Positions 5,135-61,580 of a DNA stretch of 64,000 nt are shown in pieces. Each line of letters opens with the position of its first letter. Positions within the stretch are counted from its first letter, which is position 1. The stretch comes from Euprymna scolopes (lineage: Eukaryota). The stretch lies in NCBI GenBank assembly GCA_053919585.1, contig CM132797.1; one strand, written 5' to 3'. The notes under the pieces were generated by a model that saw only the letters and a program-made list of their open reading frames with translations, was not told where the DNA came from and searched no databases. Both the position numbers and the translations under genes were made by a program.

Positions 5135-5411
5135 CCATTCACGTGAAATCATTTTTCTTTTTTCCCCACATTCTCTCTACTTCATTTTATTTTTTCACTT
5201 TTACCAAGTAAGTTCTAGAGCTTGTAGTTTCATTAAATTCTTTGCAATCAAAATCTGATTCTGCATTTTGCAAATTCCTACCCTCTACTAAGAAAGAAAG
5301 TATTTCTTTTGAAACTCCGCGAATTAAGGATAGTCCACTTGCGTTTGAAAATGAAATATTTTTTTAACTTTTCTTAACGTGTTTTAATATGTTTTATTAA
5401 TACATTGTTCT
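5135..5411 (+). mobile_element. Family A short element, copy 1, with decayed hammerhead motif (5279-5330)
   Basis: Aligns to 24581-24865 and to the reverse complement of 61400-61580; core decayed to CTACTAA, GAAACTCCGCG retained. Confidence 0.7.
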
Positions 5412-5496
5412 CACACACACAGACACACACACGCGCGCACGCACACACACACACTTACACACACACACACACACACATATATATACATATATATAT

Positions 5497-6232
5497 ATAT
5501 AATATAAAGCTGAACGTCTGTGTGTGTCAGGTCACGAATAGGCTCCTATATGGGTGACTATTATAGAAAACTGATCACATATAATGATAGAAGATGTATC
5601 GAGACACATGAATGGGTATGTTCGATCTGGCATAATGATGATTCATTAAAGTTGTGGGGTCTGCGTACGCGGCTGGTACACAAAGTATGGAAATAAAAAT
5701 TTAAAAATTAAAAAAAAAACTGTTTACAAGGGTTTTATATATATAGATGTACATAATAATACTTTGATAAGTATACTTTAACTTAAATAGGGATGGTATG
5801 ATAAAATTGTGGGGCCTGCGTTGGCGCCTGGCCTCCATAGAATGAAAATAGGCACAAACTTTAAGAAAGAAGTATACTTTGATAATTATGTTTCAGTTTG
5901 AAAAAATATGGTATAATAAAATTATGGAGTGTTCTTTCGCGCTTGACTTCCATAGAATGGAAATATGTCACAAAGTTTAACAAGTTTTTTTTAATATAGA
6001 TCCACAGAATATTGTGATAAGTGTTTCAGTGTTAACATGTATGGTATAATAAATTATATGGTTTATCTATTTTATTTTTACTTTCATTATATTTTTCTTT
6101 GAGTTTGATAGCCCCGAATTTAAGCTATCTCTTTACAACCCTTCCTTTTCATAACCTATCATATTTTCATAAATCAGAGTCCATTTTCTGTAGGCTGTTT
6201 TTGAACCCAGTCAACGGCGGGTACTTTTGCTA

Positions 6233-6234
<2 letters not shown>
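5497..6234 (+). mobile_element. Non-autonomous Helitron-like element
   Basis: 5' ATATAATATAAAG..GTCTGTGTGTG head; 3' GC hairpin CCCAGTCAACGGCGGG then CTAG|T; internal imperfect direct repeats. Confidence 0.7.
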
Positions 6235-6297
<63 letters not shown>

Positions 6298-6429
6298 GTT
6301 TTATAGTTAAGAGGTAAGGTAACCATAGAAGTATAACAAGTTTAATACAGGAGTGTTCAATACCGAAGTAGAACAAATTATATAAATATTTTTTTACACA
6401 GGCAGGAATGTATTGCTACACAGTCACAC

Positions 6430-6490
6430 AGTCATGAGCATGTTTCGTTCAACTAGCTTTGAGAAACTAGAAACCTCTTCAGGCGGTTTT
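6430..6490 (-). ncRNA. Hammerhead-like motif (core intact, stems I and III decayed) in a ~290-bp segment between two (TA)n tracts
   Basis: Minus strand CTGAAGA-GGTTTCTAGTTT-CTCA-AAGCTAGTTGAAC-GAAA-CATGCTC. Confidence 0.5.
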
Positions 6491-6582
6491 GCTATATGAA
6501 AGCTATTTGCTTTCATATAGGCAAGACCGCTGAATAGGTCTGTCTATATAGACCTCTCTCTCTATATATACCTTTCAAATGA

Positions 6583-6667
<85 letters not shown>

Positions 6668-7874
6668 CAAAACCTCTGATCTGGATGGAGTACATACTCC
6701 TATTTGGGAAATATAGTACGATTTTGAATATCTTCAGTATCAAATAATTCTTATACATTGTGAAATTTACTTCATGTGTGCAAACCAAACAGGGGAGATA
6801 TAATATATGAAAACTATTTGGAATCAAGTCTCCTCTTGCTCTTATTTCAGATCATGGGAAACTATAGCAGCAAGTTTTAGTTTTTCCTCCATAAACCCCA
6901 GTGGTTTTCAGAAAATATCAGATATTTTGTAATTTATATGCTAACCTAGGAAAACAATGACTATGATTTAAACATTATATGACTGTCGTCAAGGGCCAAA
7001 AATAAGCTCTGGATGATGAATGATCCTCTTTTATGTGCGACCTCAAGGGCAAATGTCAACACTTACAACACAATTAATGTCAGACCTTTCCAACGAACCT
7101 TCATTTATTTAATTCTAATCAATAGTCGCTGAGATGTCGAACTCATAAAATTGCCTGAAAATTTAGCATATCCATGCTGGTAGACTAATCAGATATTGAA
7201 ATACACATATATTTAGTATTATTGGGAGAAACTCCATGAAAATTTGCAGGATTTTGATAGATCATGATACTATTCTATAATTTCAAACCAATAAAATATG
7301 GCCAAATGTGCCTACATGTGTATATATAGTGTTCTTCAGGGCAGCTTAACTTTTGCTACTTCGGCTGTCTCCCCTGTTGCNNNNNNNNNNNNNNNNNNNN
7401 NNNNNNNNNNNNNNNNNNNNNNNNNNNNNNNNNNNNNNNNNNNNNNNNNNNNNNNNNNNNNNNNNNNNNNNNNNNNNNNNNNNNNNNNNNNNNNNNNNNN
7501 NNNNNNNNNNNNNNNNNNNNNNNNNNNNNNNNTTAAGGATTTGCTAAACCGCAATATATGGCGTTCTGTCAAGTCTGGTGTGTAATTTTAAGAAACTCTT
7601 AGCCAAGTCAAATCATAGCACACATTTAAAGAAACCACACACACACAGACACACACACACATATATATATATGTGTGTGTTCCATACACACACACATATA
7701 TATGTGTGTGTGTGTATGTGTGTGCGTATGGTTGCTTTAAATGTGTGCAATTATTGGCCGAAAGTGAAAATGTGTGTGTGTGAGAATCTACAGACTTGCA
7801 ATAGGGTATATAAAGTATTCAGACATATGGAAAATATTTTAACCTTGTTTTCTCCTGAACAATAGCTACTAATG

Positions 7875-7935
<61 letters not shown>

Positions 7936-58488: not shown

Positions 58489-59099
58489 ACTAGCTTTACC
58501 ATACGTATTGAGCACTTTTGAAGTAAATACTTAAATTTTACGCATAAATTTATACTTTTGTATATTAAGTTTATGTGAGTAAATGAAGTATATATATATA
58601 TATATAATGAAGGAATAGAAAAGTCTATATTCAAAAGTTCATTTTGTTGCCCATCTTAGTTTTTATTTGACATTCACAATTCCTTACAGTATCTGTTTCG
58701 TAGCGCCAAATCGATCACTTAATTATTATATCAATTTGTGAATCGATGTGTCACTTAACCTGTCACAAGTAATCGCAACAATTAATCCGTCAAAAGGAAA
58801 TTAAGTGCGTTTTAACATGATTAAAATCCAAAAATTTGAAGAGAAGCTGTAAATACCTTAAAATATGCTTCCATTGCGCCATTCATGGATTCACTAATTG
58901 ATATAATAATTAAGTGATTGATTTTATGCTACAAAACAGATACTGTTGTGAATTGCAAATATCAAATAAATTATAAGATGGTCAACATAATGAACTTTGA
59001 AATATAGACTTTTTCATTCATTCAGCATACTGCTATGTAATTTCATTGAGCTACTAAATAAGGATTGATATATATAAAAATAAAATAAAATATATTTCC

Positions 59100-59130
<31 letters not shown>

Positions 59131-59282
59131 GATATATATATGTATATATATATATATATATATATTGTGTTCGATTACTTAACCCAAAAAGCGATTTTAT
59201 TTAGATTCTATTTGTGTTATGCTGTTTACTAGACTGTTACTAACGAGTGTGAACCATCCTCACATTAAAAACAAACAGTGTG

Positions 59283-59832
59283 TCTTACTCTGCCATCNNN
59301 NNNNNNNNNNNNNNNNNNNNNNNNNNNNNNNNNNNNNNNNNNNNNNNNNNNNNNNNNNNNNNNNNNNNNNNNNNNNNNNNNNNNNNNNNNNNNNNNNNNN
59401 NNNNNNNNNNNNNNNNNNNNNNNNNNNNNNNNNNNNNNNNNNNNNNNNNNNNNNNNNNNNNNNNNNNNNNNNNNNNNNNNNNNNNNNNNNNNTGTCAAGA
59501 GTTAAAGAAACAGATTCACAGAGGTATCTTACTCTGCCATCNNNNNNNNNNNNNNNNNNNNNNNNNNNNNNNNNNNNNNNNNNNNNNNNNNNNNNNNNNN
59601 NNNNNNNNNNNNNNNNNNNNNNNNNNNNNNNNNNNNNNNNNNNNNNNNNNNNNNNNNNNNNNNNNNNNNNNNNNNNNNNNNNNNNNNNNNNNNNNNNNNN
59701 NNNNNNNNNNNNNNNNNNNNNNNNNNNNNNNNNNNNNNNNNNNNNNNNNNNNNNNNNNNNNNNNNNNNNNNNNNNNNNNNNNNNNNNNNNNNNNNNNNTG
59801 TCAAGGTTAAAGAAACAGATTCACAGAAGTAT
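59283..59832. repeat. Tandem repeat partly hidden by two N-runs
   Basis: Both N-runs are preceded by TCTTACTCTGCCATC and followed by TGTCAAG(A)GTTAAAGAAACAGATTCACAGA. Confidence 0.85.
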
Positions 59833-60567
59833 TTATGACTGCTTTTATTCTGTGTAATTGCGTTTGGTATATACTACGAGACCTGCATTTCCTTAGAGCG
59901 GACTCCAGAAACCATTTAAAGATTTTGGAGTCCGTCTCTATTGCGATGCGGAAACCTTCTTTGTGCGGGCAGAAAGAAACATCTTTTTCTTTGGGGAACT
60001 GTGAATCTTTTCTCCCGTTTTCTCTCCCCGTTGTGCCATTATTTTAATCGTTTTTAAAATTTAATAAACTTTATTTTAGTGTCCCCGTAATTTTTGGCAC
60101 ATTCAATATTTCGCCATCAGAACTCTTTACTTCCGACATAGTATTATTATTTTTACGCTATCGATTTTCTCCTGATGAGATGATAGCTGGACGAGCTCTC
60201 GAGAGACCTCCGCTCATTATATCTTTTAAAATTATGACGTGAAATGGTTTAATTGCAAATAAAAAAAAATGTTATTATTCTGTGTAAGACAAATCCTATA
60301 GGATAAGGAGTTATAATATTTCAAATGTATTCTTTGTCTTACATGGAATAATAAAAAATATTTTCATTTTAAATGTAAGCATTTCACGTCATAAATTTTT
60401 ACATTTATTGAATTACTAAAATTTGATTTATTTGCTCTAATTTGTATATCGAGCAATTTTTATTCAGATGGGATAGTACTTATAGAATATTACTGCCAGT
60501 AATATTTTTTAAGACTTATGATCACAGGTTTCCATACCAGTTGATTATTAGATAATTTTATTCTGAA

Positions 60568-60627
<60 letters not shown>

Positions 60628-61185
60628 ACAGAGTGCGAGTGAAAGTGAGAAAGTGAAGGGAGAGTGAGGGACAAATAGAATATAAAAAATACACATACAT
60701 GCATCGACTTGACTGACAATTACTCAGCACTTGTCACTCCTTCCTGTCAATATCTAAAACTGTACAAACTCTCGTGATGAGGTCTTAAAAGTATTTAATG
60801 TCATCTTTTTACCCATACAGCTACCATTGCCAGTTCTTACTTGATCATATCCTAGTCTATAATACACATTCATTCTCATGACTATCGCCCCATCACTTGG
60901 TGACCCATTACTACTTTTATTACATCGCTGTAGAGCGATGACTGAATATTTCAATATTTAAATTTATACATTTGACCAAAGCCCCTACTGTTATATACAT
61001 TTCATGAGATGTCTTATCCTACCTTTATACATTATACAATGAAAACGTTTGCTGTGAGTGTGCCCTCGTGTATACACTTTACATGTGTGCGTGTTTATCA
61101 TACTCTCGCATAATATCTTAGTTCGTGAATCATCAACAGTTATTTATTAATATGGCCCTATGCCTTTTCCGTATTTTCATAACGG

Positions 61186-61248
<63 letters not shown>

Positions 61249-61274
61249 TATATAATTATATGTATATATAAAAT

Positions 61275-61580
61275 TACAATTGAATTTACCAAATGGATCC
61301 AAGATGGTTAAATTAAAGTAAATTATAAATATTAAAGAATTAATATTTATAAAATTATCTCAGCCAGATAAATAAGCTCGATAAAACCAAATAGGAAATA
61401 GAGCTTATAATATGAGCAAACATTTAATAAAATATGTTAAAAAACACTTTGAAATGAGTTAAAAACATATTTAATCTGAAAAGGAAACACTAGATAAACG
61501 GATAGTCCTTAATCCGCGGAATTTCGAAGAAATACTTTCCTTCTCATCAGAGGGTAGGAATTAGCAAAATGCGGGATTGC
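61275..61580 (-). mobile_element. Family A element, copy 3, next to (TA)n
   Basis: Reverse complement aligns with 24700-24990. Confidence 0.8.
61505..61556 (-). ncRNA. Type I hammerhead motif with intact core (family A)
   Basis: Minus strand ACCCT-CTGATGA-GAAGGAA-AGTA-TTTCTTC-GAAA-TTCCGCGGAT-TA-AGG; palindrome TCCGCGGA in stem III. Confidence 0.68.

What the first reader, a model, noticed from the sequence alone, without database searches (positions are those of the whole stretch)
5135..61580. Candidate system: several hammerhead-bearing short element families beside (TA)n tracts, with a Penelope element nearby
Seen: hammerhead cores or near-cores at 5279(+), 6430(-), 15762(-), 24721(+), 28603(+), 54781(-), 58415(-) and 61505(-). 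They belong to several unrelated, apparently non-coding segments of roughly 200-450 bp, and most abut (TA)n tracts (6294-6585 and 24577-24997 have TA on both sides). A Penelope-type RT/GIY-YIG element lies at 29036-30617. Established: Penelope-like elements carry minimal type I hammerheads in their pseudo-LTRs, and metazoan retrozymes are non-autonomous hammerhead repeats that yield circular RNA. Inference: this genome hosts a diverse Penelope/retrozyme system with TA-microsatellite targeting, which would make self-cleaving motifs very numerous and could cut intronic transcripts.
Basis: partly seen in the sequence, partly recalled or inferred. Interest (0 to 1): 0.85.

Follow-up and report, generated by a model that had tools for sequence, protein, structure and literature searches.

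The report
Hammerhead-bearing retroelements in TA microsatellites
The window holds mostly decayed copies of at least five unrelated, non-coding, very high-copy jumping elements of a 5.9-Gb animal genome, each carrying a Penelope-type hammerhead ribozyme motif and ending in a (TA)n microsatellite; this kind of element is known, and I found no sign that the motifs cut RNA today.

Summary
Partly confirmed, and ordinary in kind.

**The eight named sites**
- One is a complete type I hammerhead (54847-54784, minus strand).
- One is an intact minimal, dimer-type motif (61505, minus).
- Two are decayed copies of that same family (5279, 24721).
- Two have the core plus helix II but weak outer helices (6430, 15762).
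- One is a half-motif left after a deletion in a fold-back (58415).
- One is not a hammerhead (28603).

**Evidence that the motifs are real**
- Rfam finds no hammerhead in the window.
- Descriptor scans exceed dinucleotide shuffles: 1 hit against 0.02 (strict), and 3 against 0.01 (core plus helix II).

**The elements**
- The motifs belong to five repeat families with no sequence likeness outside the core.
- Family 1 has 21,254 exact 22-mers across its predicted cleavage site, and 6,042 identical intact 44-nt motifs.
- 3' ends abut (TA)n in 29 of 30 copies (family 2) and 20 of 24 copies (family 1).
- Copies are 5'-truncated or head-to-head pairs, and non-coding.
- Several published Penelope-hammerhead traits are present.

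**Evidence for cleavage**
- PolyA RNA-seq shows transcription but no sharp ends.
- The excess of 5' ends at the predicted site is matched by a TA-microhomology control.

**What is missing or already known**
- There are no tandem retrozyme arrays in this window.
- The scan has already reported hammerhead elements in (TA)n elsewhere in this genome.

The parts
54744..55070 (-). Family 2 copy. It has an internal deletion and an internal (TG)n lies upstream. The 3' end ...TATAAATAAATTTA abuts a TA-rich tract.
   Evidence: At least 1,666 candidate copies, 94-96% identical over the 3' 320 nt. 29 of 30 copies have (TA)n at the 3' end.
54784..54847 (-). Complete type I hammerhead motif of family 2: UGGC / CUGAAGA / 7-bp helix II with a 13-nt loop / GAAA / 6-bp helix III / GUA, then GCUA. 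The predicted cut lies between 54788 and 54787.
61262..61580 (-). Family 1 copy, 5'-truncated, with its 3' end in (TA)n at 61189-61242.
61503..61556 (-). Intact minimal hammerhead motif of family 1: CUGAUGA, 7-bp helix II, CGAAA, the palindrome UCCGCGGA, then UUA followed by AGG.
24577..24997 (+). Family 1 copy, 5'-truncated, with (TA)n on both sides. Its motif at 24723-24771 is decayed (C3 to T, A15.1 to G).
4926..5411 (+). Old family 1 copy (72% identity) of the short 3' form. The core at 5285-5291 has decayed to CTACTAA.
6296..6583 (-). Family 3 copy, a head-to-head fold-back centred near 6506, with (TA)n on both sides. The hammerhead-like motif runs 6482 to 6416.
   Evidence: At least 2,491 candidate copies at 75-80% identity.
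15696..15815 (-). Family 6 copy, cut by the gap at 15661. The core CUGAAGA lies at 15797-15791, followed by an extra U and a 4-bp helix II.
58360..58606 (-). Family 5 fold-back. The CUGAAGA half of the hammerhead is deleted at the centre and the GAAAC half remains.
25034..25217 (+). Second family 5 copy, cut by the assembly gap at 25218.
29000..30506 (-). Frameshifted remnant of a Penelope-type ORF (RT motifs, then GIY-YIG). Its 3' end is lost in the gap 28686-28872.
   Evidence: No Pfam hit.

Best explanation
The window carries copies of at least five unrelated, non-coding, high-copy retroelement families. Each has a type I hammerhead motif of the Penelope-element kind on the strand whose 3' end lies in a (TA)n microsatellite.

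Shown:
- family membership and copy numbers
- 3' ends fixed at (TA)n
- variable 5' truncation, or head-to-head inverted pairs
- absence of ORFs
- the motif architecture

Inferred:
- The elements are non-autonomous and are copied by target-primed reverse transcription at nicked TA tracts.
- The copying enzyme is most likely a Penelope-like RT/GIY-YIG enzyme.
- The transcript's own (UA)n read-through tail may help it anneal to the target.
- The hammerhead is inherited from a Penelope terminal repeat. It would process multimeric or read-through transcripts: as a monomer in families 2 and 5, and only as a dimer in family 1.

Most copies in the window are dead.
For: Copy number and ends:
- At least 3,870, 1,666 and 2,491 candidate copies for three of the families.
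- For family 1, 21,254 exact 22-mers span the predicted cleavage site and 6,042 copies carry the identical intact 44-nt motif. Only 186 carry the same motif with U at core position C3. The master sequence therefore keeps the core.
- 3' ends abut (TA)n in 29/30 and 20/24 copies.
- 5' ends vary, and truncated copies have (TA)n upstream as well.
- Inverted pairs occur in families 3, 5 and 6.
- There are no real ORFs.

Motifs against chance.

Match to published Penelope hammerheads: PMC4209133 lists a long helix II, a short helix I, an unpaired base between positions 9 and 10.1, a G10.1-C11.1 pair, and a palindromic helix III. Each trait is seen in several of the families.

Match to published insertion behaviour: PMC8557442 describes (TA)n as the preferred target of Neptune and Naiad Penelope-like elements. 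It also describes inverted 5'-truncated copies and hammerheads near the 3' ends.

Genome context: a Penelope-type ORF remnant lies in the window. The genome also holds canonical Hammerhead_1 arrays.
Against: - No Rfam hammerhead model matches any site.
- Family 1 has a C-U mismatch at positions 15.2/16.2 and only 3 bp of helix I. Its minimum-energy fold is not a hammerhead.
- Most family 2 copies have C-A where the window copy has C-G at the base of helix II.
- PolyA RNA-seq shows no sharp ends, and depth is greatest across the family 1 site.
- The 5' ends at the predicted family 1 site (134 loci) are matched by a TA-containing control site 6 nt downstream (about 177 net). They amount to well under 1% of copies.
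- No sequence link to a Penelope terminus was obtained. No other Penelope ORF lies near 66 sampled copies.
- LINE elements are present too.
Confidence: 0.7

Rival explanations
1. The families are SINE-like elements copied by a microsatellite-targeting non-LTR LINE, for example of the Dong/R4 clade, not by a Penelope-like enzyme. The hammerhead would then be a passenger.
For: A LINE RT tail ORF lies in the window, and two of its four 3' ends touch TA-rich tracts. Dong-R4 LINEs are abundant and recently active in an octopus genome (PMC13282606). No Penelope ORF lies beside 66 sampled copies.
Against: The families share no 3' tail with the window's LINE. Hammerheads of this architecture, head-to-head inverted copies and a (TA)n bias are all published traits of Penelope-like elements.
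Confidence: 0.15
2. The motifs are fossil or chance look-alikes with no catalytic activity in any copy, and the families are ordinary SINEs.
For: No Rfam hit. Helices are imperfect in families 1, 3 and 6. There is no cleavage signature in RNA-seq. The 5'-end excess is explained by TA microhomology.
Against: Five unrelated families share only the core in the same order and strand. Descriptor hits exceed shuffles by a factor of 50 to 300. Family 2 folds exactly as a three-way junction. Family 1's master sequence keeps C3 (6,042 against 186). PolyA libraries are poorly suited to detecting cleaved RNA.
Confidence: 0.12
3. They are true non-LTR retrozymes: tandem units that self-cleave, are ligated into circular RNA, and are then reverse-transcribed.
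For: The genome has tandem Hammerhead_1 arrays with periods of 410-412 nt. Some family 1 motifs lie 374 or 638 nt apart on the same strand.
Against: No tandem array of any of the five families lies in the window or in 66 loci. Copies end at a fixed 3' end in (TA)n, not at the cleavage site. The only abundant back-joint in RNA reads is an internal duplication of 55-57 nt.
Confidence: 0.1

Closest known systems
Minimal and variant hammerheads of Penelope-like elements (Cervera and De la Pena 2014, PMC4209133)
   Same: - Type I topology.
- A long helix II of 6-8 bp in families 1, 2 and 3.
- An extra base between positions 9 and 10.1 in families 2, 3 and 6.
- A G10.1-C11.1 pair.
- A palindromic helix III suited to dimers in family 1.
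- A short helix I.
- Very many copies per genome.
   Different: The location in a Penelope terminal repeat is not shown here. Families 2, 3 and 5 have a full helix III of 4-6 bp and could act as monomers. Family 1 has a C-U mismatch at positions 15.2/16.2.
Non-LTR retrozymes of animals (Cervera and De la Pena 2020, PMC7229834; Li et al. 2026 preprint, 10.64898/2026.07.22.740005)
   Same: Non-coding, non-autonomous and AT-rich, with type I hammerheads. A derivation from Penelope terminal repeats has been proposed.
   Different: Retrozymes are defined as tandem repeats that give circular RNA. The copies studied here are dispersed, 5'-truncated or inverted, with a fixed 3' end in (TA)n.
(TA)n-targeting Penelope-like elements: Neptune and Naiad (Craig et al. 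2021, PMC8557442)
   Same: Insertion bias for (TA)n, inverted 5'-truncated partner copies, and a hammerhead near the 3' end in canonical clades. The 31-34 nt between the predicted cut and the 3' end in families 2 and 5 is close in size to the published 30-40 bp 'tail'.
   Different: Those are autonomous elements of 3-4 kb with an ORF. These families have none. Whether the tail correspondence means anything was not tested.
Sm-alpha SINE of Schistosoma (hammerhead plus tRNA-type promoter); from my own knowledge and from earlier notes of this scan
   Same: A short, dispersed, non-coding retroposon that carries a hammerhead.
   Different: ARAGORN finds no tRNA-like head in the window, and I found no clear A and B promoter boxes.

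Membership tests
Hammerhead ribozyme, type I | Core CUGANGA ... GAAA ... UH in the right order on one strand | tested here: met
   Met at 54843(-), 61550(-), 6482(-) and 15797(-), and in other copies of family 5. Not met at 28603. Half deleted at 58415.
Hammerhead ribozyme, type I | Three helices around the core, including the A15.1-U16.1 pair | tested here: inconclusive
   Met for family 2, where the minimum-energy fold is the three-way junction. Met by inspection for family 5 (helices of 5, 4 and 4 bp). Family 1 forms helix III only as a dimer, with a C-U mismatch, and helix I has 3 bp. Family 3 has a 2-bp helix I. Family 6's helix III is unclear.
Hammerhead ribozyme, type I | Match to the curated covariance models (Rfam Hammerhead_1 and relatives) | tested here: not met
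   No hit at gathering score, at E<=10, or in a 201-nt search. The same model finds 73 hits above its cut-off elsewhere in the genome. The model has 45 positions, so long loops and stems are penalised.
Hammerhead ribozyme, type I | Site-specific self-cleavage | tested here: inconclusive
   PolyA RNA-seq shows no sharp ends and full read-through. The excess of genomic 5' ends at the predicted site is matched by a TA-microhomology control. Biochemistry cannot be done with these tools.
Penelope-element hammerheads (min-HHR and variants) | Long helix II, an unpaired base between 9 and 10.1, a G10.1-C11.1 pair, and a palindromic 15.2-16.2 / loop 3 | tested here: met
   Each trait is present in two to four of the five families, but none has all four (compared with PMC4209133).
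Penelope-element hammerheads (min-HHR and variants) | Location in the terminal repeat of an element that encodes RT and GIY-YIG | tested here: not met
   No Penelope ORF lies within 1.5-10 kb of 66 sampled copies. The window's own remnant loses its 3' end in an assembly gap. A genome-wide comparison of termini could not be run.
Non-LTR retrozyme | Head-to-tail tandem units, each with a hammerhead | tested here: not met
   No such array in the window or in the loci. Second copies, where present, are inverted.
Penelope-like element (autonomous) | One ORF with a telomerase-like RT followed by a GIY-YIG endonuclease | tested here: inconclusive
   RT motifs (RYVDD, LPFLD, YRKPT) and then a GIY...YIG motif are readable across three frames on the minus strand. 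Atlas neighbours carry DUF8422/RVT_1, HTH_animal and GIY-YIG. Pfam gives nothing for any piece. The ORF is broken by frameshifts and stops.
(TA)n-targeted retroelement | A fixed 3' end abutting (TA)n, with (TA)n also upstream of truncated copies | tested here: met
   29/30 and 20/24 copies. Upstream TA is seen.

The most novel reading that the evidence does not exclude
Several independent SINE-like lineages of one mollusc genome each keep a Penelope-type hammerhead fold. The reason would be that the fold, rather than its cleavage, is what the Penelope reverse transcriptase recognises near the template's 3' end.

This reading would explain three observations:
- The master sequences keep the core (6,042 intact against 186 U3 motifs).
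- Nearly all copies read through the cleavage site.
- No cleavage signature is seen.
Probability: 0.15. Interest if true: 0.6.

Novelty: new member of a known kind. Interest (0 to 1): 0.33.

Why it matters
The finding shows that hammerhead-bearing, TA-microsatellite-targeted non-autonomous retroelements make up a sizeable share of a very large mollusc genome. Family 1 alone has more than 21,000 exact 22-mers across its predicted cleavage site. They come in several unrelated lineages.

The library I could search holds no description of hammerhead elements in cephalopods or in this host. Octopus repeat annotation lists hundreds of "unclassified SINE" families, so these families could help classify such repeats.

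The finding does not change what is known about how such elements work.

Tried and rejected
**1. Rfam.** Searches at three stringencies returned only microsatellite look-alikes of miRNA families.

**2. Cleavage seen in RNA.**
- One read-laying run used a locus that holds families 1 and 2 tail to tail (L029:1200-2130), with three polyA raw-read runs.
- Both families are transcribed on both strands, with no places where molecules begin or end.
- A 'goes back 57' joint is an internal duplication of a subfamily, not a circle junction.

**3. Cleavage seen as 5' ends of truncated genomic copies.**
- Pattern searches next to (TA)n first looked striking: 14 of 24 and 11 of 40 loci start at the predicted base, and 5 of 14 do so for family 2.
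- The control site 'TA followed by TCCAC', 6 nt downstream, gave about 177 net loci against 134 at the predicted site.
- Read-through copies number 21,254.
- TA microhomology at the 5' junction therefore explains most of the excess. I do not count this test as support for cleavage.

**4. A catalytically dead master.** A third of my sampled family 1 copies had T at core position C3. This is a sampling bias towards the window's own copy. Genome-wide the ratio is 186 against 6,042.

**5. Open reading frames in family 2.** The frames of 150-200 aa are YIYI/HTHT translations of microsatellites.

**6. tRNA-like heads.** ARAGORN finds none.

**7. Pfam on the Penelope ORF pieces.** No hits, even at E<=10.

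**8. Other.**
- The segment next to the Penelope remnant (30639-31316) belongs to a LINE, not to the Penelope element.
Family 3 could therefore not be aligned with other copies.

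
Full report
**Setting.** The window is G000:C15:109554001-109618000 of a 5.9-Gb assembly in 925 contigs. It is AT-rich, with 23-42% GC. It holds 23 (TA)n tracts of 18-80 bp, several minisatellites and 12 assembly gaps. I inferred nothing across any gap. Gaps cut three of the features discussed below, at 15661, 25218 and 28872. 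The site at 28603 lies on a 177-nt island between two gaps.

I then ran my own descriptors against dinucleotide-preserving shuffles:
- The full type I descriptor (core, helix II of at least 4 bp, helix III of at least 3 bp, helix I of at least 4 bp, UH) gives 1 hit against a mean of 0.02.
- A loose version gives 2 hits against 0.24.
- The published 'minimal' design (core, 0-1 extra base, G-C-closed helix II of at least 4 bp, GAAA) gives 3 hits against 0.01. None of 500 shuffles reaches 3.

The motifs are therefore more than chance, although they fall outside Rfam's 45-position model.

**The eight sites resolve into five repeat families and one non-feature.**

*Family 1* (4926-5411 +, 24577-24997 +, 61262-61580 -).
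- The motif is CCCU / CUGAUGA / a 7-bp helix II closed by G-C with loop AGUA / GAAAC / the palindrome UCCGCGGA / UUA, then AGG.
- Only the 61505 copy has an intact core. The 24721 copy reads TTGATGA and GAAG. The 5279 copy reads CTACTAA.
- Helix III can form only between two molecules, and then with a C-U mismatch at 15.2/16.2. Helix I has 3 proximal pairs.
- The minimum-energy fold is not a hammerhead, but the palindromes do pair in a cofold.

*Family 2* (54744-55070 -).
- The motif is UGGC / CUGAAGA / a 7-bp helix II with a 13-nt loop / GAAA / a 6-bp helix III / GUA, then GCUA. The minimum-energy fold is exactly this three-way junction.
- In 29 of 30 other copies the base of helix II is C-A instead of the window's C-G. 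A second CpG is also CpA. The window copy may therefore keep an older state.

*Family 3* (6296-6583 -).
- The motif is the core, an extra G, a bulged 8-bp helix II, GAAAC, and a 5-bp helix III ending UGUGUA, then GC. Helix I has only 2 bp in this 77%-identical copy.
- The copy is a fold-back centred near 6506.

*Family 5* (58360-58606 -, 25034-25217 +).
- Four copies from other loci carry UAAGC / CUGAAGA / GUCC..GGAU / GAAAC / a 4-bp helix III / GUA, then GCUUA.
- The window copy has lost the CUGAAGA half at the centre of its head-to-head fold-back.

*Family 6* (15696-15815 -).
- The motif is the core, an extra U, a 4-5 bp helix II closed by G-C, and GAAA. It is CpG-decayed in the other copies, one of which is an inverted pair.
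- Helix III is AU-rich and unconvincing.

*28603(+).* This site has no CUGANGA. It matches nothing but a (GA)n tract.

**What the families are.**
- All are abundant. There are at least 3,870, 1,666 and 2,491 first-look candidates for families 1, 2 and 3.
- Exact-pattern counts for family 1 are 21,254 for a 22-mer across the predicted cleavage site and 6,042 for the intact 44-nt motif.
- Copies of families 1 and 2 share a fixed 3' end followed directly by (TA)n: 20 of 24 and 29 of 30 copies.
- Their 5' ends vary, and homology reaches about 1.2 kb in the longest copies.
- Truncated copies have (TA)n upstream as well. The microsatellite is therefore the target and not merely a tail.
- Families 3, 5 and 6 occur as head-to-head inverted pairs that turn just 5' of the hammerhead.
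- There are no real ORFs. The long frames in family 2 are translated microsatellite.
- Different families often sit tail to tail in one TA tract, for example in L029.
- In every family the hammerhead lies on the strand whose 3' end is in (TA)n. The predicted cut is 31-34 nt from the 3' end in families 2 and 5, and 105-270 nt from it in families 1 and 3.

**Comparison with the literature.** Cervera and De la Pena (PMC4209133) describe Penelope-element hammerheads as follows:
- type I topology
- a long helix II (7-8 bp)
- a short helix I (4-5 bp)
- an unpaired base between positions 9 and 10.1
- a conserved G10.1-C11.1 pair
- a palindromic helix III that implies dimers
- low activity in vitro

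Each of these traits appears in two to four of the five families. Craig et al. (PMC8557442) report (TA)n as the preferred target of Neptune and Naiad elements. They also report inverted 5'-truncated partner copies, a 30-40 bp tail, and hammerheads near the 3' end. A 2026 preprint argues that animal retrozymes derive from Penelope terminal repeats.

**The Penelope element in the window.**
- On the minus strand between about 30506 and 29000, three frames together read RT motifs (RPIL..., NVPIDE, QIDGISMG, RYVDD, LPFLD, YRKPTFTG). A GIY...YIG motif follows. Stops and frameshifts break the reading.
- Pfam gives nothing for any piece.
- Protein-atlas neighbours of three pieces carry DUF8422/RVT_1, HTH_animal and GIY-YIG, in that order.
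- I accept it as a dead Penelope-type remnant.
- Its 3' end, where a hammerhead would be expected, is lost in the gap 28686-28872.
- None of 66 sampled loci, including six with 10 kb upstream of family 1, holds a related ORF. No physical link between the families and a Penelope ORF was found.
- A LINE with a CR1-like RT tail is also present, so a LINE mobiliser is not excluded.

**Do the motifs cleave?** I found no positive evidence.
- *RNA reads.* Three polyA raw-read RNA runs were laid on a locus that holds families 1 and 2. Both strands are transcribed. No place shows molecules beginning or ending, and depth is highest across the family 1 site. PolyA libraries are a weak test of cleavage.
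- *Genomic 5' ends.* I asked whether 5'-truncated copies start at the predicted cut, as they would if cleaved RNA were reverse-transcribed. Samples of (TA)n-adjacent starts looked enriched: 14 of 24 and 11 of 40 for family 1, and 5 of 14 for family 2. Genome-wide, 134 loci fuse (TA)4 to the first bases after the predicted cut.
- *Control.* Another TA-containing position 6 nt downstream gave 239 loci, less 62 background. Read-through copies outnumber both by two orders of magnitude. TA microhomology at the 5' junction explains most of the peak.
- *Master sequence.* The family 1 master keeps the catalytic C3, with 6,042 intact motifs against 186 with U3. This fits a single neutral substitution in dead copies. 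It shows only that the source sequence had an intact core.

**Genome context and earlier notes.**
- Rfam Hammerhead_1 finds 73 hits above its cut-off among 74 scored candidates elsewhere in this genome. These include tandem arrays with a period of 410-412 nt.
- The scan has already reported tRNA-headed hammerhead retrozymes and a hammerhead-tailed SINE in (TA)n on other pieces of this genome.
- The present window adds further families but no tandem array.

**Verdict.**
- The elements are new members of a known kind.
- Cleavage, circular RNA and the identity of the mobilising enzyme remain untested.

Noticed in passing
window 5990-6233 (+): A further high-copy family ('family 4'), 87-91% identical in 6 of 66 loci. 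Its end ...GGGTACTTTTGCTAG abuts the (TA)n at 6234. I saw no hammerhead core in it. A related end lies at 10458.
   Followed up: partly
window 38514-39267: Two tandem units (period 407-413 nt, about 80% alike) of another repeat without a hammerhead core. The period happens to resemble that of the genome's Hammerhead_1 arrays.
   Followed up: partly
window 16518-18384 (+) and 32652-34885 (-): Two inverted copies (83-85% alike) of a LINE. The ORF at 17662-18384 looks like a CR1-type RT tail. Four copies of its 3' end (...TGTAAAAAAA) lie at 18448, 26311, 31403 and 43463(-), and two of these are followed by TA-rich tracts.
   Followed up: partly
L029:1848-1904 (family 1), seen in RNA reads: Hundreds of reads carry a 'goes back 53-57' joint. 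A transcribed subfamily of family 1 therefore has an internal duplication of about 55 nt.
   Followed up: no
family 1: window 5411, L053:621, L029:2214: Family 1 has two 3' forms. A short one ends ...GCTCTTAT + (TA)n. A long one has about 160 nt more. The long form may be a composite of two elements joined in one TA tract.
   Followed up: partly
L029:1488-2127, RNA runs X20-X22: Reads over family 1 show a 3:1 strand bias. With the usual stranded-library convention, most transcripts would be antisense to the hammerhead. The library type is not on record.
   Followed up: no
window 1136-1474, 3307-4176, 12762-13431, 31772-32040: Minisatellites with units of 16, 17, 22 and 38 nt, in 7 to 51 copies.
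   Followed up: no
family 2 loci, about 400 nt upstream of the 3' end (e.g. L044:1200-1260): Family 2 carries an internal (TG)n tract of variable length, with conserved sequence on both sides.
   Followed up: partly
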